A DNA stretch of 64,000 nucleotides. It comes from Anthoceros angustus. Its lineage: Eukaryota > Plantae > Anthocerotophyta. The notes beneath the pieces are model-generated. The model ran no database searches, was not told where the DNA came from, and worked only from the letters and a program-made list of their open reading frames with translations. The first letter of the stretch is position 1; each line of letters begins with the position of its first letter. The DNA lies in contig MU008185.1 in the NCBI GenBank assembly GCA_010909165.1, forward strand, positions 310,001-374,000. The letters are read 5' to 3'. A program made the translations under genes and the position numbers. Below are positions 39,737 to 58,757 of this stretch, piece by piece.

Positions 39737-41921
39737 GGTGCTTGATGACGTGAGCATGGACGATGTTGTTAGGGAAAAATGTGAGAAGGAAAGCCTAAGT
39801 AGTGCACTTGATGCAGCTATTACGTCAAAAGTCCAGGGAAGCGTACTGTCAACAGAATGCTTACATCATCTGTTACAGGTGTGCATACGACAGAGAGATA
39901 TTCTCAATGGTAGGCGGATACTTTCATTATTGCTGGAAGTGGATAACGGCTTTGGCGTTCAAATCGGAAACAAGCTGATCCACCTGTTTTCTAGATGTGG
40001 AAGTCTTTCAGAGGCAAATGACACATTCCGTAAGATGGAGGAGCGGGATGCATATACTTGGCTGGCGATCATTGCAGCACACGTCCACCATGGGGAAGGC
40101 AAGAAGGCTATACAACTGTATAAGAATATGCGACTTTCAGACTTGAGGCCAAATCCAAATGTTTATGCTGCTGTCCTTAGAGCGTGCACAAGCACAGCAG
40201 CCCTGGCAGAGGGTAGGGTGATCCACAGACACATTATAGAAGCTGGTCTAGACAATGACGTTGTGGTCGCAAACAGTCTTGTTAATATGTATGCCAAGTG
40301 TGAAAGCTTGGTTGAAGCGAGAGAAACTTTCGACAAGATGCAGAAAAAATCTGTCGTTTCATGGACCACAATGATTGCAGGTTATGCCCAGCACGGGCAG
40401 GGTTGGGAGAGTCTGAGAATTTTCAGAGAAATGCAAGAAGAGGGTTTGGAGCCTAATAAGGTCACGTTCGTGAGTATCATCAAAGCATGTGCCACCCTGG
40501 GAGTCCTAGATGAGGGAAAGCAGATCCACACCCAGTTAACCAGGAAGGGCTACCAAGTGGATAACTTCGTAGGAAATGCGCTGGTTGACATGTACTTCAA
40601 ATGTGGGAGTCTGGAGGAAGCACTCAAAGTGTTCCTAAGTATGCCTAACAAAGACGTAATATCATGGACTTCTGTGATTGGGGGGTACACCCAGCATGGA
40701 CGAGGTTCTGAATCTCTGCAGTGGTTTCACCAGATGCTAGAAGCTGGTGTACGTCCCAATAAGGTGACATTTATAAACGTCCTCAAAGCCTGTAGCAACT
40801 CAGGAGCGTTGGATCAGGGGAAGGAGATTCATAGCCTGCTTGCCAAGACTGAGTACAAGTCGGACGTCGCTGTTGGGAGCGTGCTTGTTGACATGTATGC
40901 AAAATGTGGGAGGCTGGATGATGCTCAGAGAGTATTTGACCAGCTACCAGATAGGGATCTGGTGCTTTGGACGACACTGGTAGCTGGATATGCTCAGTGT
41001 GGACATGGGAACAGAGCTTTTCAGTTATTTCAGCAAATGCAAGCGGAGGGTGTTCAGCCAAACGAGATAGCCTTTCTGAGCATCCTGAAGGCATGTGCCA
41101 GCGTAGCTGCTCTTGATCAGGGCCGACGATTTCACTCGGAGCTGAAGAAAAGTATGCTGAAGTTGGATGGAGTCATCGGAAACACCCTTATTGACATGTA
41201 TGCCAAATGTGGCAGCCTAGAGGAAGCAGTTCTTCTGTTTGATAGCTTATCACAGAAAGATGTGGTCTCTTGGACCGTAATGATAGCAGGATTTGCACAG
41301 CATGGGCGTGCTCAGGAGGCGCTTGTGTTGTTTGAGCGGATGCAGCAAGAAGGCCTGAAGCCAAGTGATGTCACCATCGCCTGCATCCTCTCTGCCTGCA
41401 GTCATGCAGGCCTGTGGGCTGAGGGCCACCGTGTATTCAAAACAATGTCCCAAAGATTTGGGATAAGTCCGGACATCAAGCACTACACATGCTTGGTGGA
41501 CCTTCTAGGTCGTGCTGGCCACTTGTCTGAGGCGGAGGTGTTGTTGCATGAACTGCCTGTGCAGCCTGATGTTACACTGTGGATGTCCCTGCTTGGAGCA
41601 TGCAAAACTCAGGGCAACACGGACTTGGGGAGACAATGCTTTGAGCAGATTGTGAAGCTCGAACCTGCAAATGCAGCTGCTTACGTGCTGTTGTCAGACC
41701 TGTACACAGCAGCGGGCAGGTGGGAAGAGGAGGCAGAATTGAGGAGGAGGATGGCAGCTGCCAAAGTGAAAAAAGCACCTGGGAGGACCTGGATTGAGCT
41801 GAACAATCAGGTTCACACCTTTTTAGTGGAAGATAACAACCACCCAGAGAGGAAGCAGCTATATGCAAAGTTACAGGAGCTCGCCTCTGGGTTAGCAGGC
41901 TGCACACGAAATCCTGAGTAG
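39737..41921 (+). CDS. Second PLS-class PPR array (E/E+, PG box, no DYW), probably an exon of the upstream PPR gene
   Basis: ~728-codon open frame with PLS triplets, HYTCLVDLLGRAG and PGRTWIE; preceded by a branch point (CTAAT) and TAG acceptor at 39734-39736; no transit-peptide-like start of its own. Confidence 0.88.
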
Positions 41922-42600: not shown

Positions 42601-45600
42601 ATGGCCTCATCATCTGGAGGTAAGAGGATATTCCACCCTCAGAAATGGGTTCCCTTACGCGCACAGGATATCAAGCCTGAGAACATGGCCCAACCTAGAG
42701 GCAAGCTTCCACCCTTGGACCCTGCAGTGGTACCGAAGACGGACACAATCGAGCCAATGTCCATTCTCTCTCATGATGCCAGTCCACCTCCTCGTAGTGT
42801 TCTGTCTTCGCATCCAGCAACCTTTCTTGAGTTGGATTCTACTCGTGCTGAGCAGAGCCAGTTTAGGTCTCAGTTCATTCCTCCTCGTCCGGAGGTCCGT
42901 GAGTCTGCGCCAACAGCCCACGATTTCAGAATAGCACCTTTGGGGTATCTAGATGACTCCAAGTCTCCAAGGCCGCGGTATCGCAAGAATTCTATGACTG
43001 GTCTCTCATCACCGCCTCAGCAACCAACCCGAGAAATGATCATGCATGTTGGCAGCAGGGAGGAGATGCCTGCCACAGCTGCTGTTGGGAGTGCACAAGA
43101 TGCTTTGCTCAATAGTCCTGAAGGAATGCCAGCTGGCTCCCATGTTAGCCTGGCCCCTTCAGTCTCAGCAGGTGCTTCAGCATCGCAGATTTCCCTCCCA
43201 AATTCTGCGCAGTATGTCGTATCAGAAGTGGCTGCTGAAACAGCGATTGTGATTGATCATCCTTCTGAGGTCTCCACCAGCAGCCCAGGTGGGGCAGCAG
43301 ATATTCCAGTTGGGAACCCTGAGAGTCGTCCATCTGCAAGCAGGTTTAGTAGAGATACCATCTCATCCTCATCCAAGAAGACTTCGGTTGTGCACCAAAA
43401 GGGATTCGGGAAAGGAGGAAGTGCAGAAGCTCCTTTCAGGGAAGGAGTGCATCGAAATTTCACACAGGAGAACATGGATGCTGCCGAGCAGGACATGCAT
43501 CGGAAAATGGTTCAAATCCAATCTTCCTGACTGCTACAGCTTCCTTTTCGAACAAGAATTAATGGCAAATTTTTAAGCGTTTTTACTTATGACTGCTGCA
43601 GCTCACTCCTTAGACTGGAACATTTTGGGGTAGAGGTCTGTTCACCCATAAGTTTGGTGGTCCTTGATATTGTGAAATTCACAGGGTGGTGGTTTATGAT
43701 GATGTCGATTTGGGGGCTAACCATGCGTTCCTGCTTGTGGGCAGGTTTCAGATACTGTGACAAGGGCTAAAGAAAGAGTCGAATTGATTGAAAAGGATAG
43801 CCATCCCAAAGCACCTACCTTCGGCAGGTGCTCAGGCTTCCAACGCTGGGCATATAAGCGACGACTTAAGAAAGCTGCTGAGGGGGTTTGTTCATCCTCA
43901 TTGAACTGTGAAGATTTGTCCCCTTGCTCCATTCGTTTATTAGTGTTTTTCCTGACACTCTCTATCTCCAGACCAAAAAGTGGAAAGTTCATTGGAGCCC
44001 GTGGCTGGAGTCTCTGAAAGCAATCGAAGGAGCCTTTGGATCAGCCGTGATGCTGACTTTTGCTTTCCTACGATGGGTGCTCTTTCTAAATGTGATGATC
44101 GCTGCAATATGGGTTGGAATGTTGATAATCCCTTTCTGGGTTAAGCCTCCACCCGGTTACTCATGGAAGTTATTCACGAAGCCAGGTTTCAAGGCAGTTG
44201 TACAGGTTGCTTGCACTTGCGTCAGCCGTTCTTTTTTGCTGAACCTTGCACAGATTGTTTGATGGTCAAAGTGTCCCACTAGCTATCCAACTCGTCGAAG
44301 CAGGCCTGCATAGCATGTGGATATTGCTTTGTCACCAATCAATTTCTGTGTCATACTAGCAATGGACATGTTTTTCCACCACCTCTAACTTGATCTCTCT
44401 CAGGCATTGGCTCCTAGATTGTAGGGTCTGCATTTCAAGTGTTCACATGTGAAGCTCGAATGGGGTGTCCTCTGGTCTGTTATGTGTTCACCAGAACCAC
44501 ATGTATGCTTGTATTATATCAGTGTTACTTATGATAACTCACTCGAAGGTATGGTGAAGGGTGATGCATTAGAGAGGACGTGGGTGTATTTCGGAGGTTA
44601 TTTCTACAGCCGAGCTGACCAGCCTGGTGCATATCGTGTTGATTGGGCATATCCTACTGCAATTGCCATAATGTTCCTTGTTAGCTTGATCGGTCTACTT
44701 GTTAGGTGAACCATGTGATACTTCATACTTGCGTATATTTTGCTCGCTCCTGCTTTAATGGGATTCCAGGCACGTTCTGGATGACTTCAGTTCAGCCGCT
44801 AATTTTGAATACGGAACTGACCTGCAGGCCTGGCTCTCATCGTGGCATGTATTCTCTTTGCTGCATATGCTTGCAGGATAGCATCAAGGATAATGGGCAG
44901 TGGTGATGCTGCGATGCCATATAAGAGTAGTGTGTTTCCTTGTTCAGGCCTGGTGTTTACCTCCTGGGACTTCCACGTGACTTCTCATGATGTAAGCTTA
45001 ACCTGAGCCTTTTGCAGCTGATTCCTCTATGGAGTTCTTGTGATCCTCCTTGCAGGGAGGTCATTTCTTACAAACTGAAGTGGATTCAACTGCTAAATGG
45101 GATGACAGGCAGCAACAAAGCTGAGGCGGAGCATTCGGACAGAACTGCAGGAGCTGATAGCAGATATTTCAAGCAAAGCTGTGACAACTGGAGTCACATG
45201 GAGGGACCGTCTTGTAAGTTTGTCCTCCTCAGTCTGCCTGGTTTGAAGCTGCTGCCTGTGAAGCATAACCCATGGAGCATCTTGTTTGGATCCTTTTTGC
45301 ATCATGCAGCCTCAAATTCCCGTGTTGATGGCAGGGCTATTTTGCTGCCTTTGTCTTGTGGCCACTGTCCCTGGGTGCTAGTGTGGTGGCTATAGTTTTC
45401 CTTGTTAAATATGCTGGCAAAATCAACAACAAAATTGGTTTTGCACTTTGTACCTTCCCTCTGTGTTTCAGAATAGCTAGTTGTGTGAAATAGATTTAAA
45501 CTTATGCATTGTTTTGAGCACCGACACAAAGAGTTTTCGGAATTTGGGGTCTGCAATGTTATAACAAGGGTACGTCTCCTCAGGGACTGGATTTGGACAA

Positions 45601-47139
45601 CCTCTACTTTTAGCGGCCCTGAATGTAGTAGGACCCATGATCACTCGTCTTATTGTGGCAATTGAGAACTGGAAACCAGCTGTGCACGATCGGGTTCTCC
45701 TGGTGAAGCTCTACTTGTTGAGAGCTATCAACCTTTCTACGCTTATCACAAGGTTTGCCATTTGCGGAATCAGCCCGAATGTCTAAAAAAACCATGTTGC
45801 TTGTCCGAGAGGTTCTACGAATCTGTGACCATGCTTGGCTTACAACCCAGGCTCTTTATGATGCTCAACGGTGCTCGACGTGAACGTGAAGGGGAACGTG
45901 AGTATGCAGATTGCTCAGTATCAAAGTCCTCGTGTGGAGATGGATACATCTGCTGCACAAATGTGAAGCTTGGAACGTGGGGTGTTTGCACTGTGGACCA
46001 GGTATATTGCTTGCAGCAATCTTGCATTGAACACATCGAACTGTTACTGGACATACAAGTTCGATGAGAGTCTTTTGAAGGGAGCTTCTAATATCCTTTT
46101 GGTGGATGTGCAGTACTTGAGGTGCGTACCGACCTGTGTGGAAAACACAGTTGGGGCGCAGCTCATCAGGCTTATCATTACTACGACCCTTATCAACAAT
46201 GGCCTGGAGCTCCTCACAGGCTTCGTTACTCTATGGGTATTCAAGGTTCGTTCGTTCTTTGGCATTGATCATGCAAGTTCTAGTTGCAAACCCCTGGTGC
46301 AGAGCTGACAAGGTCTTTTGTGACAGTCTAAGAGGCAAATGTCAGTAGAGAACATGGCTCTTGACATTTTGTACCTTGAAGCCCTCATCTGGATCGGCTC
46401 CTGTTTTGCTCCTGCCACAGCACCTTTGGCGGTGATAGTCAATCTCGTCACCTTCTACTGCATGAAGGTAAGCACATACCTGGTTCCTCCTTCGTAAAGA
46501 AGATAGCCAGAACATAACCCATCGCTCGTGCTGATGTCTACAGTTATCCCTGACAAAAACATGTTCGGCCCTGGAGAAGCGATACAGTGCGTCTCGAACT
46601 TCCAACGTCAGCTATGGCTTGCTGTGTCTCACATTAATTTTGTGCAGTGTCCCAGTATCACTTCTTTTGGTGCAAAGCACTACAAGCTTTTGTGGGCCTG
46701 TGCGCAACGAGAGAACTATGTATTCGGTATTATCAACATACATTCAGGTTGGGCTGAACAAACTCTATTTGTCAATGCCAGATTGGCTGACGCGTACTGA
46801 TTGCGGGCGGTATTTTGCTGCAGAAAGCACCCAGTATTGTGTGGATCGTGCTTGAGTGGATTGGGAATCCAGGCATCCTGATAGGAATCCTGGCAATCTT
46901 AGCTGTCAGTTTGGTGCTGCTCAGGTCTCAGCTCGCCAGATCTACACAGCACCTGAAAATGACCACAAGGGAGCTCGATCTTCAAAAGCGTGAGGTGGTT
47001 GAAAGATCCTCCTTCATGCGCAGTCAGGTACCCCAGCCCAGCTTTCCATGTCTTGCCTTCCCATCCCAGAATCAAATCACTTTGTTTTGTTGAAACATTC
47101 TTTCTGCCTCCCAAGCAAGGGAACGAATCTAGGCTCTGA
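42601..47139 (+). CDS. TMC: TMC (transmembrane channel-like) family protein, multi-exon
   Basis: Colinear TMC motifs: PWLESLKAIEGAFGSAVMLTFAFLRWVLFLN; VYFGGY...YRVDWAY; VFTSWDFHV; IVAIENWKP; signature CVENTVGAQLIRL; LIWIGSCFAP; YSASRTSN; SFCGP; WIGNPGILI. 3' end approximate. Confidence 0.88.
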
Positions 47140-50246: not shown

Positions 50247-53189
50247 ATGAGTGGGCGGCGTGAATCCTATGGGGACAGCAGGGTGGCAGGATCCTCGCAG
50301 GCTTTTAGTTTCCTCAATGCTGGGGGTGGGAGAGCCCAGAACCCGCAGCAGAGGAGCAGCTTTCCCTTCTGTGGGGATGGAAGAAAGGAGCAGCTCTTGA
50401 CCAGGTTGAATGATCCAGACCTGCAGTACGTGCATTCTTCCCAATCTGCCATCACCACGACTCTGTCCATCGGGACGGACACGCCCAGAGAGATGGATGG
50501 TGGTAACCTCTACTCCGCGGGATGTTGGTCCTGGGGCCCGAAGATTGATTGTCCAGCGGAAGCTTCCAGGGATGGGCGCGGCCAAGCCAGCTCCTCCGGG
50601 GGGAAGAGGAAGAGAGCAGCGAAGGGGAGTGCTTTGAAGGAGGATCTGGGGAGCAGTCTTGTGCTGGGGCAAGGGAGCTCCCCTATCGACATCCGGCCCA
50701 GTCAAGGTGCTGCCAGCTTTTCGGGTGGCAATTTCTGCTTTGATGTTGATTCTCCCACGGCTCTGTCGTTGGGTCAGATGGATCCTATCTCGGAGAGTCC
50801 GGACAGTCAAGGCTCGTTCTTGGGGTCTTCTGTGAGGTCCAGGGCGTCTGATGGGTTTCTGTCCATTGGGTCTGGATGTGACGGACTTTTGTTCAGTCAG
50901 CTGGACTGCAATCAGTCCAGAGAGTCCAGGGACTCTGGTGCCGTTTACAATCAACCTGGTGTAGACTACAACCTGAATTCGGGTGTACAGTTGCAGTTAG
51001 GTCAAAGGGGGAATCTTGGTGAATCTGTGACGAGAGGTGGGCGGTCATTTGAGGGCACCAGACGAGGGGGCCTGTCTAGGCACATGGAGAAGAGTCCGGG
51101 TTTTGTGTTGGAGCTTGGGTCCATGAGGAATGCGTCTGGCCAGAGTAGAGAAGGACAGAACCTTTCCAGCATGAGGGAGTCCCAGAGTCAGTCGGGTATG
51201 CTATTAGAGCTGGGATTGAGTGAAAATGTGCTGGATAATCGGGAAAGCGTCAGAGCATCTGGTGGTCCTGTGCCTGTGTTGGATGAGGGGTCTTCGTCCG
51301 CTCGATGGAGGAATAGTGGTGGTTTTATGCCGTCTTTGCTGATGGGAAGCCCTCATCTAGGGCCCCCTTGCAGTCAGCTACGTGAAGAACATTTGCCGAA
51401 AGTTTCCAGGCCCGCAGAGCCTGTGCTGGAGTGTCATCTGAATAGGGTGGAGCAGGAGCTCCCGACGAGTATGAGAGCATCAACCAGTTGCACGACGTCC
51501 ACCACTTCAGCATCTGCACCACTATCTGAGAAAGTGTCGAAAGTGTGCAAGTTCCGTGGCTGTGGGAAAGGAGCTCGAGGTGCATCTGGCTTGTGTATAG
51601 CCCATGGAGGAGGTCGCCGGTGTGAGAAACAAGGGTGTAACAAGGGAGCGGAAGGACGTACTGTGTACTGTAAGGCACATGGTGGCGGGCGAAGGTGTCA
51701 GAAGCTGGGGTGCACTAAGAGTGCTGAAGGGAAGACAGACTACTGCATAGGTCATGGCGGGGGACGGCGCTGCAGCTCTGAGGGCTGCTCTAAAGCTGCC
51801 AGAGGTCGGTCCGGGCTGTGCATTAGGCATGGTGGGGGAAAGAGATGCCAGATTGAAGGGTGCACAAAGAGCGCAGAGGGATATTCTGGGCTTTGCATTT
51901 CTCATGGAGGTGGCAGAAGATGCCAGTTTCAGGGTTGCACCAAAGGTGCTCAAGGAAGTACCATGTTTTGTAAAGCGCATGGGGGAGGAAAGCGATGTAT
52001 GATTGCAGGGTGTAACAAAGGGGCAGAGGGAAGTACGCCGCTTTGCAAAGGCCACGGGGGTGGCAAGAGATGCATGCACGAAGGGGGAGGAATATGCAGC
52101 AAGAGTGTGCACGGTGGGACAGCCTTCTGTGTTGCCCATGGTGGTGGCAAGCGCTGTGCTGTCGAAGGCTGCTCGAAAAGTGCTCGGGGGAGGACGGATC
52201 ACTGTGTTCGGCATGGAGGAGGAAAGCGATGCAAGTTTGAAGCTTGTGGGAAGAGTGCTCAAGGGAGTACAGATTTCTGCAAGGCTCACGGTGGAGGCAA
52301 GCGGTGCCAGTGGGGTGTAGAGGGATCACCATTTTTTGCGTATGCATCTGATGGTGTGTCTTGGGCCGGGGGTACCTTGAAACCAGAGCCTTGTGAGAGA
52401 TTTGCACGGGGGAAGACTGGCCTTTGTGCAGCTCACAGTGGGCTTGTACATGACACTAGGGTCCATGCTGGTTCTGTCATTGGCCCTGGCCTCTCTCCTG
52501 GCCTGTTTCGAGGGCTTGTTCCAGGACCCACACTGGCCAAAGGAACAGCAGATCCATCAGGAAGCACAACAGGCCTGACAGAAACTGCAAGCGGAGATTC
52601 TGAAATGCGTGATTTTGGAGAATCTGGCATAGATTCTAGTGAAGATGATCTCTCACGAATGGAAACTGCCAACGCGAATTCATGGGCGCCACCATTAACA
52701 GGAGCTACAGAGTCTGCTTTGGACAGTGGGTTGTCAGTGGTGGGATCAGCTCTTGGTGCTTCCTCCAGGTCCCTTCCACAAGGAACCAGTTCCATGACTG
52801 GAGCATTGGTCACTCCCTCAGCAGCTCCTCTGAGTGTCAGTTCAAGCAGTTATCCACCGTCCCAGACTCCATCACTGGGATCATTTATTCCACCAAAGGT
52901 ACTGGTTCCTTTGTCAATGCAGAAATTGGGCGCTGCTGACATAACCTCCTCGAGCCAGGGCAAGCTCAGTGAGGTCCTCACCTCGAGGACCTCCGATGAT
53001 GGAGCCTTCAACATGAACTCTCTTTCCCTTCCGGAAGGTCGGGTGCATGGTGGCGGCCTGATGGAGATGCTAGCAAGAGATCCTGGTATTGGGAACAAAG
53101 TCGACCGACACCTGAGTGCATCCAAGGTTAGTAGCCAACACCAATGGCAATCTGGGGCCCTGTTTTCACCAGCAGATGAATCTCCTTGA
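50247..53189 (+). CDS. WRKY19-like/At1g64140-type protein with CxxxGCxKxAxGxxxxCxxHGGG zinc-finger repeats (no WRKY domain)
   Basis: 980-aa intronless ORF with 10 full and 1 partial C3H repeats and a conserved C-terminal PEGRVHGG. Confidence 0.92.
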   Translation: MSGRRESYGDSRVAGSSQAFSFLNAGGGRAQNPQQRSSFPFCGDGRKEQLLTRLNDPDLQYVHSSQSAITTTLSIGTDTPREMDGGNLYSAGCWSWGPKIDCPAEASRDGRGQASSSGGKRKRAAKGSALKEDLGSSLVLGQGSSPIDIRPSQGAASFSGGNFCFDVDSPTALSLGQMDPISESPDSQGSFLGSSVRSRASDGFLSIGSGCDGLLFSQLDCNQSRESRDSGAVYNQPGVDYNLNSGVQLQLGQRGNLGESVTRGGRSFEGTRRGGLSRHMEKSPGFVLELGSMRNASGQSREGQNLSSMRESQSQSGMLLELGLSENVLDNRESVRASGGPVPVLDEGSSSARWRNSGGFMPSLLMGSPHLGPPCSQLREEHLPKVSRPAEPVLECHLNRVEQELPTSMRASTSCTTSTTSASAPLSEKVSKVCKFRGCGKGARGASGLCIAHGGGRRCEKQGCNKGAEGRTVYCKAHGGGRRCQKLGCTKSAEGKTDYCIGHGGGRRCSSEGCSKAARGRSGLCIRHGGGKRCQIEGCTKSAEGYSGLCISHGGGRRCQFQGCTKGAQGSTMFCKAHGGGKRCMIAGCNKGAEGSTPLCKGHGGGKRCMHEGGGICSKSVHGGTAFCVAHGGGKRCAVEGCSKSARGRTDHCVRHGGGKRCKFEACGKSAQGSTDFCKAHGGGKRCQWGVEGSPFFAYASDGVSWAGGTLKPEPCERFARGKTGLCAAHSGLVHDTRVHAGSVIGPGLSPGLFRGLVPGPTLAKGTADPSGSTTGLTETASGDSEMRDFGESGIDSSEDDLSRMETANANSWAPPLTGATESALDSGLSVVGSALGASSRSLPQGTSSMTGALVTPSAAPLSVSSSSYPPSQTPSLGSFIPPKVLVPLSMQKLGAADITSSSQGKLSEVLTSRTSDDGAFNMNSLSLPEGRVHGGGLMEMLARDPGIGNKVDRHLSASKVSSQHQWQSGALFSPADESP

Positions 53190-55314: not shown

Positions 55315-57348
55315 CTAGGCGTAGTAGTTGAGACTGGCTTTCTTCTTCGCCTGCACCTGAATGATACCCTCATTGAAATCCTCGTGTGTAACCTCAGTGG
55401 CATCTCGCCGAAGTGCTAACATGCCAGCTTCAATGCAAACAGCCTTTAGTTGAGCCCCGTTGAAGTCGTCGGTAGAACGAGCAAGTTCTTCAAAATTTAC
55501 ATCCTTCCTCACATTCATCTTCCTTGAATGTATCTGCAGCAGAATGAGCCACATGAGATTTCCGACATAAACATACCTCTAGCACAAGCATATGTACCTG
55601 AACCTAATAGCAGACACATACTTGTAGTATATTGGCTCTTGCTTCTTCAGTTGGATGAGGGAACTCTATCTTCCTATCCAACCGACCAGATCGCATCAGC
55701 GCAGGGTCAAGAATGTCTGCACGATTGGTAGCTGCAATAACCTGCAACACCAAGCAACAAAATCTGATAAGCACGCCCTATGCATGGAAATAAACACACA
55801 TGAACAGTTGACCATCGCGATCAAATGCCAGTAACTATCTGCTAAGCATACCTTAATACGATCATCACTGCTGAATCCATCCAACTGGTTCAACAGCTCA
55901 AGCATTGTTCTTTGAACTTCTCGGTCTCCACTGACTTCACTGTTGACAGGAAAAATTTTCAAGTGTTTCACCCACATCACAGGTCCACCAGAAAAGGTAA
56001 CAGACACATCTTTGAACAGCAGCCACTGCCATACCTGTCAAAACGCTTGGTTCCAATTGCATCAACCTCATCGATAAAGATAATGCAAGGGGCCTTCTCC
56101 TTCGCGAGTTGAAAAGCATCCCTCACAAGCTTTGCCCCATCTCCGATAAACATCTAAGCGCCACCAACCACCAGTTCGGATTTAGCACCTGATCCAGCTA
56201 AGTATCAGGTGACATAACGTCCATGGAAACCGCTATTCTCATACCTGTACAAGTTGAGGCCCAGCCAGCTTCAGATATGTTGCATTCGTTTGAGCAGCAC
56301 AAGCCCTTGCCATCAGAGTTTTGCCTGTGCCTGGGGGCCCATACAGAAGAACACCCTTTGGGGGCCTAATACCCAAACTTTGAAACATTTCCTTATGTGT
56401 CATAGGAAGTACGATAGCCTCCACAAGTTCTTGAATCTGTCACAACATGTGCGAATGAGCAGGATCCAACGGTCATCCAGGTCCTCAACCACCTAACCAT
56501 GCCTCTGCAGAAAAGGCAAACATCCAGACGGACTTCACAACACTGGCTCTCACCTGCTTGTCGAGCCCTCCAATATCACTGTAATCCTCAGTTGGCTTCT
56601 CGTCAACTTCCATGGCCTTGACCCGTGAGTCATACTCCGAAGGTAGTGTGTCCAAAATCAAATAACTATCCTTGTTAACCCCCACAAGATCGCCAGGCTT
56701 AAGCACGTCTGGGTCCACCAGACCTACCACTGGTAGGAAAATTGTCTGCACACCGGCGCCGTCAGTCAGAACAGAAAACACTGGAACCCCCTGCTTTGCC
56801 ACCCCTTCAGCCCTTAGCGAGCTCCAAGTCATGGGGCGTTCTCAACTTACTTGCCGCGTGGAAGTCTTCAGCACAACACATTTTCCCTTTCTCTGAGAGT
56901 CAAGGTCGACATTTGCCCCATCCTCCTCATCTTCATCCTCAGGATTCACATTCAGGATCTGCCATGGCAAAATAAACTGTAATTTTTCACCTTTCTCACA
57001 GTAGCACAAACCCTGAATCTCCAGTACGCTATACCTCCACCACGTTCCCCACGAGATAGGGCAGCTGCTTGTTAAGCTTAATCTTCTCCTGATTTTCTTT
57101 GATTCTCTCTTTGGTTGCATCAAGGTCATGGTTGAGGCGCTGTGTCTCGTCCTGCCAGAGGCCCGAAATCCAGTATGAGTGCGTTGCCTGGACATAGGCC
57201 TCATGAACCCTAATAGCCACCAAGCGAGTACCTTGAGTACGCGAATTTCATTGTCCAAGAGGCGAGTCCGCCGCAGAAGGTCTTCCGTGGTCATGTTGGC
57301 CAGCTCATCGTTGGGTTCGTCGAAGATATCGGCCTCGTTGAGCTCCAT
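55315..57348 (-). CDS. RPT5: 26S proteasome AAA-ATPase subunit RPT5 (6A), multi-exon
   Basis: [81 protein letters not shown]. Confidence 0.98.
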
Positions 57349-58757
57349 GGTCGGAAGACGAGTACGTGGAACAAAGAGCAAGAGGCGCTGAAGAAGAAGG
57401 CAGTGCACCGCACAGGGCTGTCTCAATTCTCTGTCTATATTTGTTCTCTTTCCTTCTCCACTTGCAACATTTGTGTTTTTTCCCTCTTTTTGATTTCTTA
57501 ACTTATTTTTCTTTCTTTTCCGCTTATACTCTCCACCTAGGACCATCTACCATCCCATCCTTCTTGCCTCAGGTTTTTTTTAACTTATGACCCAGGTAGA
57601 TGGGAAGATTTTAAAGAGTGCAGAAAGACCATAATAGACTCGATGAGCTTGCGGATGTTGTTGAACATTTATACAAGACCTAAAGCAATCAATACTAATC
57701 ACGAGTTTAAATTAAATATAAATATTAGTTTATTTTAGCTATTATTATCATGATAATTTAGTTACATTTGAACCAAGATACCCAACCACCAAAGGCAAAA
57801 TAATGGACATGACTAGAGTTCATGAATAACACCTCGAGTTTTAAATGGGTTAGGTGAACACTCGTTTTAAATGCAAACAGCAAGAATAGCTGGGGTGAGA
57901 GTAAGTTGGACAATTGCTTTTACTTCCAAAATCCGATAAATATTGCTATTATCTTAATATGGTAATAACCAACCTAGTAATAACCTCGCCAAAGCGAGCG
58001 CTTCAAAATAGAATGTGCTATGCATACTCAGACACCACAGTTTTTGTCACCAGCTTCTTGAAGCCAAGTTGAGTTACACGGAATTAACCACATTTTGCAT
58101 ACATATCAACTGAACAACTCCCAAGAAATCAATCACTTTTAAGGCCTCTTTTCTGAACTTGCACTTGCTTTACCTAATCCAAGGCTTTAGTATGATCACA
58201 AACTTTGAGCAGGAACCCAAGAGTCACATGATTAGGTGGCCTCATGCCTCCTACTGCATGCATCTGCTTCCATACAGAGAGAGTGCTTCTTGGCTTAGCC
58301 CACGTTCTTCCTACATAACGAATATAGTTGTCCCACTCACCACATCTCTCATGGTTGACTCGTGAACGGGCACCCGCTAAGCTCCCTACTTGCATACTTG
58401 TTAACCAGGCAGCTGGCAATGAGCACCTCAACTAGCAACCTCATTTTCTTGAACCTGGTCATGTAGTTGTTTATAAGTACAATAGCAATAGCATTGTGTA
58501 GGTTGTTCCTCCAAAACTTTTTAAAGTCTTGTTGTGATTTTGGAACTTTGTAAATTTGTAGTTGAACTTTTGAAATATCTTGAATTATATTTTGTACCAA
58601 AACCGTTACAAAAAAATAAGATTTTGATTCGAGCCCGCAGAGTTGTAATTTGTATGTGCTACATAAGCATCTATCACCCGATAGAGGAATCAATGCGAGA
58701 TAAAAACTAATATAGTTTAGGTTTGATTTTGCGTGGAACTCGCTAGTATGAAACTAT

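What the first reader, a model, noticed from the sequence alone, without database searches (positions are those of the whole stretch)
42601..47139. Apparently intact TMC (transmembrane channel-like) gene in a land plant
Seen: exon peptides follow the TMC layout in order: pre-TM1 PWLESLKAIEGAFGSAVMLTFAFLRW, FGGY...Y..AY, VFTSWDF, a signature-like CVENTVGAQLIRL (animal consensus CWETxVGQE), IWIGSCFAP, ASRTSN, CGP and NPG. It has GT-AG introns and a ~300-aa disordered N-terminus. Established: TMC1/2 form the vertebrate hair-cell mechanotransduction pore and share a fold with OSCA/TMEM16; I know of no TMC in Arabidopsis and no functional study of a plant TMC. Inference: this could be an ancestral mechano- or osmosensory channel retained in non-seed plants, perhaps tied to flagellated sperm, i.e. 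an uncharacterised plant mechanosensing system.
Basis: partly seen in the sequence, partly recalled or inferred. Interest (0 to 1): 0.85.

Follow-up and report, generated by a model that had tools for sequence, protein, structure and literature searches.

The report
Ordinary plant TMC channel-family gene
This is an intact gene, kept by selection, for a TMC-family membrane protein (animal members form the hearing channel) in a non-seed land plant, probably a hornwort; such plant genes were already reported, but their function has never been tested.

Summary
All eight peptide landmarks are present in order on the + strand. A 14-exon GT-AG model (42601-47139) gives 922 codons with no internal stop.

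Evidence that it is a TMC:
- Two adjacent exons hit only Pfam TMC (PF07810).
- Exon 3 alone matches the solved C. elegans TMC-1 and TMC-2 structures.
- The exons keep 15 of 16 near-invariant TMC columns.
- No OSCA or anoctamin signal appears. A fold model of a lycophyte relative matches TMC-1/2 at E about 2e-18, against 1e-5 or weaker for TMEM16, OSCA and TMEM63.

A related gene on a public contig (L001) has the same 13 exons and the same splice sites. DNA similarity is confined to exons and dN/dS is about 0.1, so the gene is functional.

TMC genes in green algae, liverworts, mosses and lycophytes were published in 2019-2022, and many are auto-annotated. I also found them in ferns, and none among named seed-plant proteins. 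Mechanosensing and a link to sperm remain untested.

The scan had already noted another TMC gene on another piece of this genome (s1-267889). The joined protein was never searched or folded.

The parts
42601..43509 (+). Exon 1: start codon plus 303-aa low-complexity, probably disordered cytosolic N-terminus
   Evidence: Open frame, donor ATG|GT. Similarity to the L001 gene starts exactly at the ATG and the first ~46 residues are 80% identical. The L001 donor sits at the same place. No Pfam domain and no hydrophobic segment.
43745..43885 (+). Exon 2: charged pre-TM1 helix region (47 aa)
   Evidence: AG/GT, phase 0. 52% identical to L001, with the alignment starting at the first residue after a cag acceptor in both. 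An in-frame alternative acceptor at 43751 cannot be excluded without RNA.
43972..44185 (+). Exon 3: conserved pre-TM1 motif (W..SLKAIEG.FGS) and TM1
Evidence: Matches C. elegans TMC-1 7usw at E 4.4e-8 and TMC-2 8tkp at E 5.9e-6. 126 TMC hits. 75% identical to L001. Hydropathy peak 2.45.
44549..44705 (+). Exon 4: FGGY.Y loop and TM2
   Evidence: AG/GT, phase 1 to 2. 72% identical to L001. tblastn hits from plant TMCs. Hydropathy peak 2.23.
44877..44991 (+). Exon 5: first intracellular loop with the VFTSWDF motif. This is the region that in animal TMC1 is crystallised as the peptide of PDB entry 6wud.
   Evidence: 68% identical to L001 over the full exon. W293 and D294, near-invariant in the family, are kept. 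The plant profile matches TMC1 peptide 6wud_B at E 1.1e-5 over this region.
45109..45213 (+). Exon 6: charged helix after the WDF motif
   Evidence: AG/GT, phase 0. 53% identical to L001, same splice sites.
45335..45437 (+). Exon 7: TM3
   Evidence: 71% identical to L001 over the full exon. Hydropathy peak 2.39.
45584..45752 (+). Exon 8: TM4 and TM5 with the L-E-x-W-x-P linker
   Evidence: 78% identical to L001. Family-wide P392 and E402 kept. Two hydropathy peaks.
45851..46001 (+). Exon 9: cysteine-rich loop between TM5 and TM6 (C..C.....CC)
   Evidence: 48% identical to L001, all Cys kept. Green-lineage conserved C450, G458, C461 and C462 kept. Short strands in the homologue's model.
46114..46245 (+). 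Exon 10: TMC signature C-V-E-N-T-V-G and TM6 (start of Pfam TMC domain)
   Evidence: PF07810 positions 1-32, 13.7 bits. C485 and E487 kept. 68% identical to L001.
46327..46467 (+). Exon 11: TM7-TM8 hairpin (core of Pfam TMC domain)
   Evidence: PF07810 positions 54-94, 26.1 bits, E 1.3e-5, above the cut-off of 25. 83% identical to L001. W543, G545 and P550 kept; Q539 is E.
46544..46747 (+). Exon 12: YSASRTSN motif, TM9, CGP motif
   Evidence: 62% identical to L001 over the full exon. S585, P605 and C618-G-P kept. Hydropathy peak 2.54.
46824..47027 (+). Exon 13: TM10 (with NPG) and a charged C-terminal helix
   Evidence: 61% identical to L001. The donor after ...RSQ lies where L001 has ...RSL|GT.
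47116..47139 (+). Exon 14 (uncertain): last 7 codons and TGA
   Evidence: AG acceptor, in phase, but not conserved in L001. The alternative is read-through of exon 13 to TGA at 47091-47093. Either way the frame ends cleanly. RNA is needed to decide.

Best explanation
Window 42601-47139 (+) is an intact protein-coding gene of 13 well-supported exons plus one uncertain last mini-exon. It encodes a TMC (transmembrane channel-like, Pfam PF07810) protein of about 922 aa. It belongs to the vertically inherited green-lineage TMC clade known from chlorophytes, streptophyte algae, liverworts, mosses, lycophytes and, as I found, ferns. Here it sits in a lineage that fits a hornwort.

Shown: the family identity, the exon structure, purifying selection, and retention of the family-wide residues.

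Inferred from solved C. elegans TMC-1/2 structures and work on vertebrate TMC1/2: the protein is a ten-helix membrane protein that dimerises. Each subunit has a membrane-exposed groove lined by TM4-TM7 that passes cations, or possibly lipids, when the membrane or a tether is strained. The 300-aa disordered N-terminus and the conserved first intracellular loop would be docking sites for regulators. What it senses, and in which plant cells, is unknown.
For: - Pfam: TMC is the only relevant family hit in the exons. Exon 11 scores 26.1 bits (above cut-off 25) and exon 10 covers the adjoining model part.
- Exon 3 against PDB: TMC-1 E 4.4e-8, TMC-2 E 5.9e-6.
- Exon 3 against 1.84 billion proteins: 126 hits, TMCs wherever checked.
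- Plant TMCs map colinearly on the exons.
- The 14-exon GT-AG model is in phase with no stop.
- The L001 gene has the same 13 exons and splice sites, DNA similarity only in exons, pN 0.20 against pS 0.71, dN/dS about 0.1 over 512 codons.
- 15 of 16 near-invariant TMC columns are kept.
- The plant profile hits only TMC-1, TMC-2 and TMC1 chains in PDB.
- The AF2 model of the Diphasiastrum homologue (pLDDT 78.9) matches TMC-1/2 at E about 2e-18 and TM 0.67. The best TMEM16 match is E 1.8e-5 (TM 0.33) and the best TMEM63/OSCA match is E 2.6e-4 (TM 0.35-0.39).
- In the tree the gene sits inside a land-plant clade with Coleochaete as sister.
Against: The animal signature CWETxVGQE is only partly kept (C-V-E-N-T-V-G-A-Q). 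One near-invariant Gln is Glu. The fold test was done on a homologue 40-55% identical, not on this protein, because the joined model has no reference. Channel activity, gating and localisation are inferred only. Several animal TMCs (TMC6/8, TMC7) are not known to be mechanosensory channels.
Confidence: 0.85

Rival explanations
1. The gene is a genuine TMC, but it is not a mechanosensory channel. It would act like the non-hair-cell animal TMCs or like TMEM16 scramblases: an endomembrane ion-leak or lipid-scrambling protein, or a regulator of other transporters, with no role in touch or osmosensing.
For: The best animal hits to exon 3 are TMC7-type proteins such as Pecten TMC7. The fold is shared with TMEM16 scramblases. 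The green-lineage clade branches outside all sampled animal TMCs, so TMC1/2-specific functions need not apply. The acidic residue after the signature Gly (animal Q-E) is not kept.
Against: Nothing here argues against it. The family-wide groove residues are kept, but they do not discriminate between these functions.
Confidence: 0.4
2. It is an unexpressed relic or recent pseudogene that merely still looks intact.
For: Transcription could not be tested. The last exon is uncertain.
Against: There are 922 codons with no stop across 13 introns. All splice sites are shared with a diverged relative whose synonymous sites are near saturation, while dN/dS is about 0.1. The near-invariant residues are kept.
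Confidence: 0.04
3. It is really an OSCA/TMEM63 or anoctamin/TMEM16 relative that was mistaken for a TMC.
For: The three families share a fold and a Pfam clan (PMC12806904).
Against: There is no OSCA or anoctamin Pfam hit in any exon or in eight homologues. The PDB sequence search finds only TMC chains. In the fold search TMC-1/2 lead by 13 orders of magnitude in E-value.
Confidence: 0.01
4. It is contaminating animal or protist DNA in the plant assembly.
For: TMCs are best known from animals.
Against: A PLS-class PPR gene typical of land plants ends 680 bp upstream on the same strand. The gene groups with land-plant TMCs, with Coleochaete as sister and chlorophytes outside. It carries the green-lineage C-x-E-N signature and the Cys-rich loop.
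Confidence: 0.01

Closest known systems
Green-lineage TMC genes: Marchantia polymorpha Mp_8g02240, Selaginella EFJ05970, Diphasiastrum KAJ7547707, Sphagnum KAH8963311, Coccomyxa XP_005649182, Ceratopteris KP509_16G079800
   Same: The order of conserved blocks is the same. They share the C-x-E-N-x-V-G signature, the Cys-rich TM5-TM6 loop and the YSASRTS and CGP motifs. HSPs are 40-60% identical and colinear. They fall in the same clade in the tree.
   Different: This copy lies on its own branch with the L001 gene, apart from lycophytes, ferns, and mosses plus liverworts. It has a 303-aa N-terminus unrelated in sequence to theirs. Protein lengths vary widely between lineages (589-1415 aa as annotated). 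None has been studied functionally.
C. elegans TMC-1 and TMC-2 (PDB 7usw, 8tkp) and vertebrate TMC1/2, pore-forming subunits of mechanotransduction channels
   Same: Pfam TMC domain; the pre-TM1 motif (exon 3, 36.8 bits to 7usw); ten-helix fold by proxy model (TM-score 0.67); 15 of 16 near-invariant residues.
   Different: Identity is only about 20%. The signature is C-V-E-N-T-V-G-A-Q instead of C-W-E-T-x-V-G-Q-E. The plant clade lies outside all sampled animal TMCs. Partners such as TMIE, CALM-1/CIB2 and LHFPL5 were not looked for. No electrophysiology exists.
Animal TMC7-type proteins (e.g. Pecten maximus XP_033748390)
   Same: These are the best-scoring animal hits to exon 3 (about 40% identity over about 60 aa).
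   Different: They carry CWETYVG and cluster with the other animal TMCs, not with plants.
OSCA/TMEM63 and TMEM16/anoctamin (same Pfam clan CL0416)
   Same: A distantly similar ten- or eleven-helix fold (Foldseek E 1e-5 to 1e-3, TM about 0.3-0.4).
   Different: No detectable sequence similarity and no Pfam hit. The window gene is not a member of either family.

Membership tests
TMC (transmembrane channel-like, Pfam PF07810) | Significant match to the Pfam TMC domain | tested here: met
   Tested exon by exon. Exon 11 scores 26.1 bits (E 1.3e-5, cut-off 25) on model positions 54-94. Exon 10 scores 13.7 bits on positions 1-32. The joined protein was not scanned.
TMC (transmembrane channel-like, Pfam PF07810) | TMC signature motif at the start of TM6 (animal consensus C-W-E-T-x-V-G-Q-E) | tested here: inconclusive
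   The window has C-V-E-N-T-V-G-A-Q. Only the Cys and the first Glu are near-invariant across 39 TMCs, and both are kept. C-x-E-N is the green-lineage form. W, T and the Q-E pair of the animal consensus are not kept.
TMC (transmembrane channel-like, Pfam PF07810) | Family-wide near-invariant residues outside the signature | tested here: met
   15 of 16 columns that are at least 90% conserved in alignment A2 are kept. The exception is Q539 to E, which 2 of the 39 A2 sequences also have.
TMC (transmembrane channel-like, Pfam PF07810) | Closer in sequence to solved TMC structures than to any other solved protein | tested here: met
   Exon 3 matches 7usw at 4.4e-8 and 8tkp at 5.9e-6; the next hit is at 0.14. 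The plant profile hits only TMC chains. Exons 10 and 11 alone gave no PDB hit, being short queries.
TMC (transmembrane channel-like, Pfam PF07810) | Ten-helix TMC fold | tested here: inconclusive
   Tested by proxy only. The AF2 model of Diphasiastrum P0128 (pLDDT 78.9, pTM 0.76) matches TMC-1/2 at E about 2e-18 and TM 0.67. The window exons map colinearly on that protein, and their hydropathy peaks fall where TM1-5 and TM7-10 are expected. The window's own joined protein has no reference and was not folded.
TMC (transmembrane channel-like, Pfam PF07810) | Ion conduction or mechanical gating; partners such as TMIE and CIB2/CALM-1 | not testable with these tools
   The only related result is that the first intracellular loop of the plant profile resembles TMC1 peptide 6wud_B (E 1.1e-5). 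To my knowledge that peptide is the one crystallised bound to CIB3. No partner search was done.
OSCA/TMEM63 (Pfam RSN1_TM, PHM7_cyt, RSN1_7TM) | [quoted passage not shown] | tested here: not met
   No such Pfam hit at E<=10 in ten exon pieces or at E<=0.01 in eight homologues. Fold similarity is weak (E 2.6e-4 or worse).
TMEM16/anoctamin (Pfam PF04547) | Match to the anoctamin domain | tested here: not met
   No hit. Fold similarity E 1.8e-5, TM 0.33, against 2e-18 and 0.67 for TMC-1.

The most novel reading that the evidence does not exclude
Land-plant TMC could be a channel tied to the motile-sperm life cycle, for instance a mechano- or Ca2+-signalling channel of spermatozoids or their mother cells. 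It might be regulated through its conserved first intracellular loop by a plant EF-hand protein of the CBL/CIB type. On this reading it was lost when seed plants gave up swimming sperm. My data fit only the distribution part. The gene is present in liverworts, mosses, this probable hornwort, lycophytes and ferns, and none was found among named seed-plant proteins. Ferns extend the range beyond what was published.
Probability: 0.1. Interest if true: 0.7.

Novelty: new member of a known kind. Interest (0 to 1): 0.3.

Why it matters
TMC proteins form the long-sought hearing and balance transduction channel of animals, yet nobody has tested what the single old green-lineage branch of the family does. 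This gene adds one more lineage to an already published list and shows strong purifying selection, so the protein clearly does something. Transformable bryophytes (Marchantia, Physcomitrium, Anthoceros) could answer the question with a knock-out. The window itself adds little beyond a clean gene model, and beyond two observations: ferns also keep TMC, and, according to an earlier scan note, this genome has a second copy.

Tried and rejected
- Exon 1 searched against 5.8 billion proteins found only the exon-1 ORF of L001. No transcript-derived protein and no protein from the window's own genome appeared.
- Exons 10 and 11 alone gave no PDB hit by phmmer. These queries are too short, so this is not evidence against membership.
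- Paper searches for Mp8g02240, for TMC with spermatozoid or bryophyte, and in a sperm phylogenetic-profile preprint gave nothing on plant TMC function. One broad search was uninformative.
- The search of earlier findings by sequence was blank.
- No synteny between the window and the flanks of L001.
- No Rfam family and no tandem repeat in the gene.
- Ten further short hits were unnamed environmental fragments, so they say nothing about seed plants.
- The careful ML tree did not finish within the time limit, so the quick tree is reported.
The phase requires the donor at 44185/44186, and L001 agrees.
- The joined 922-aa model was not sent to any search or fold tool. It was built only inside the sandbox, to check frame and stops and, from exon 3 on, as one row of the tree.
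Full report
**1. Observation**

I built a model of 14 exons:
- E1 42601-43509
- E2 43745-43885
- E3 43972-44185
- E4 44549-44705
- E5 44877-44991
- E6 45109-45213
- E7 45335-45437
- E8 45584-45752
- E9 45851-46001
- E10 46114-46245
- E11 46327-46467
- E12 46544-46747
- E13 46824-47027
- E14 47116-47139

All 13 introns are GT...AG and 76-363 bp long. The phases fit, and the sum is 2769 nt: 922 codons plus TGA, with no internal stop.

The open frame that runs on to 44205 is intron.

Exon 1 encodes 303 residues rich in Ser, Pro and Ala, with no hydrophobic segment and no domain.

**2. Handling of the spliced model**

The joined 922-aa model was not sent to any search or fold tool. It was assembled only inside the sandbox, to check frame and stops and, from exon 3 on, as one row of a tree. 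The joined search and the joined fold are therefore left out.

**3. What it is**

Pfam gives TMC (PF07810) as the only relevant hit:
- Exon 11 scores 26.1 bits (E 1.3e-5, cut-off 25) on model positions 54-94.
- The preceding exon 10 scores 13.7 bits on positions 1-32.
- No OSCA or anoctamin model hits any exon.

Exon 3 searched against 1.84 billion representative proteins gives 126 hits at E<=1e-3. The full-length hits are TMC proteins by Pfam. Their source names are:
- ferns: Adiantum capillus-veneris and A. nelumboides
- lycophytes: Selaginella EFJ05970, Diphasiastrum
- moss: Sphagnum
- algae: Mesostigma, Coleochaete, Coccomyxa, Myrmecia
- animals: TMC7-type and nematode TMCs

Further support for family membership:
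- tblastn of these proteins onto the window gives colinear HSPs from 44002 to 47048.
- Exon 3 alone matches solved C. elegans TMC-1 (7usw, E 4.4e-8) and TMC-2 (8tkp, E 5.9e-6).
- A profile of 11 green-lineage TMCs hits only TMC chains in the PDB: 7usw at 8.6e-63, 8tkp at 1.5e-54, and TMC1 peptide 6wud_B at 1.1e-5.
- When the exon peptides are added as fragments to a 39-sequence TMC alignment, the window keeps 15 of the 16 columns that are at least 90% conserved across plants, algae and animals. The one exception is Q539 to E.

The animal signature CWETxVGQE reads C-V-E-N-T-V-G-A-Q here. Only the Cys and the first Glu are family-wide, and C-x-E-N is the green-lineage form.

**4. Fold, by proxy**

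The joined protein has no reference, so I folded the Diphasiastrum homologue P0128 with the 39-sequence alignment. The result was pLDDT 78.9 and pTM 0.76.

Foldseek against the PDB ranks:
- C. elegans TMC-1 and TMC-2 first (E about 2e-18, TM 0.67-0.68)
- the best TMEM16 at 1.8e-5 (TM 0.33)
- the best TMEM63/OSCA at 2.6e-4 (TM 0.35-0.39)

The caveat is that this was tested on a relative and on single exons.

The model's helices, the colinear exon map and the exon hydropathy peaks place the helices as follows:
- TM1 in E3, TM2 in E4, the first intracellular loop in E5-E6
- TM3 in E7, TM4-5 in E8, a Cys-rich loop between TM5 and TM6 in E9
- TM6 in E10, TM7-8 in E11, TM9 in E12, TM10 in E13

**5. 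Is it a working gene?**

A 23.7-kb public contig (L001, Logan SRR33208241_4706) carries a related gene.
- All 13 main exons are found in the same order, with full-length exon alignments. Identity is 48-83% in the membrane core and 36% in exon 1.
- AG and GT sit at the same junctions.
- DNA similarity is restricted to exons.
- Over 512 ungapped codons pN = 0.20 and pS = 0.71 (near saturation), giving dN/dS of about 0.1.
- Similarity begins exactly at the ATG at 42601, which supports the start codon.
- The last mini-exon is not conserved, although the donor after exon 13 is, so E14 is uncertain.
- The flanks show no synteny.

**6. Place in evolution**

In a quick ML tree (the careful search did not finish) the window gene and the L001 gene form a pair (support 100). 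The pair lies inside a land-plant clade (98) whose sister is Coleochaete. Chlorophytes and Mesostigma lie outside that, and all animal TMCs lie on the other side.

Within land plants the pair is separate from lycophytes, from ferns, and from mosses plus liverworts. This fits the earlier scan note that the genome is probably a hornwort. I could test that note only in this indirect way.

A PLS-class PPR gene ends 680 bp upstream, so contamination is not an issue.

**7. Comparison with what is known**

- Erives & Fritzsch (G3 2020, PMC7003098) reported a single Tmc gene in Coccomyxa, Klebsormidium, Marchantia, Physcomitrella and Selaginella. They proposed loss in the clade of ferns plus seed plants, linked to rigid cell walls.
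- Wu et al. (Plant Genome 2022, PMC12806904) list TMC in Selaginella and Coccomyxa.
- Databases already carry 'TMC domain-containing protein' for many non-seed plants.

The existence of plant TMC is therefore known, and this gene is a further member.

Two small additions:
- Ferns do have TMC: Ceratopteris KP509_16G079800 and at least three Adiantum loci, with Pfam confirmation for two. The published loss point is therefore too early.
- The profile search found no named seed-plant protein. That is meaningful for angiosperms, which are heavily sampled, but not for gymnosperms.

I found no functional study of any plant TMC.

The scan had already noted another TMC gene on another piece of this genome (s1-267889). 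If that is right, the gene is not single-copy here. I could not see that sequence.

**8. Mechanism**

Shown: family identity, architecture, selection, and conserved groove-region residues.

Inferred from TMC-1/2 structures and TMC1/2 physiology (my own knowledge of the field): a dimer in which TM4-TM7 of each subunit line a lipid-exposed permeation path for cations. A conserved first intracellular loop and a long disordered N-terminus would be available for regulators.

I put about 40-45% on a force- or membrane-gated cation channel. I put about 40% on another TMC-type role: a leak channel, a scramblase or an endomembrane regulator. The remainder is unknown.

The sperm link is compatible with the land-plant distribution but has no direct support. 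Coccomyxa also carries the gene.

**9. Verdict**

Novelty: a new member of a known kind. Interest is modest.

Noticed in passing
P0131, P0006, P0003, P0007, P0002 (database proteins): Ferns carry TMC genes. Ceratopteris richardii has one and Adiantum has several loci. This contradicts the published statement that Tmc was lost in the clade of ferns plus seed plants (PMC7003098).
   Followed up: partly
L001:3302-8300: Public contig Logan SRR33208241_4706 (organism not given) carries a TMC gene 68% identical in the core to the window gene, with identical exon structure. Its C-terminal helix has a 13-residue tandem duplication (LQKREVVERAQVQKS / LQKPVVVEKAQVQRS). Its flanks (DUF247 and NAC genes) are not syntenic with the window.
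   Followed up: partly
another piece of the same genome (scan note s1-267889): An earlier scan note reports a second TMC gene in this genome. If so, the gene is not single-copy in this plant, unlike what was published for other green lineages. I could not see the sequence.
   Followed up: no
window 45851-46245: The loop between TM5 and TM6 has a cysteine framework (C-x7-C-x5-C-C ... C-x3-C) that is conserved through green algae and land plants and partly shared with animals. It is probably a disulfide-bonded extracellular knot.
   Followed up: partly
window 39738-41921 (+): An intronless 727-aa PLS-class PPR open frame ends 680 bp before the TMC start codon, so gene spacing is compact.
   Followed up: no
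window 50247-53189 (+): A 980-aa open frame with about a dozen tandem copies of a Cys/His/Gly-rich unit (C..GC.K.A.G....C..HGGG.RC). It is probably a zinc-binding repeat protein.
   Followed up: no
window 55696-57546 (-): Exon-like pieces resembling a 26S proteasome AAA-ATPase (RPT) subunit.
   Followed up: no
window 42601-42740: The first ~46 residues of the otherwise poorly conserved N-terminus are 80% identical between the window and L001. Two further short islands (around 42927-43001 and 43132-43203) are also conserved. These are candidate short linear motifs.
   Followed up: partly
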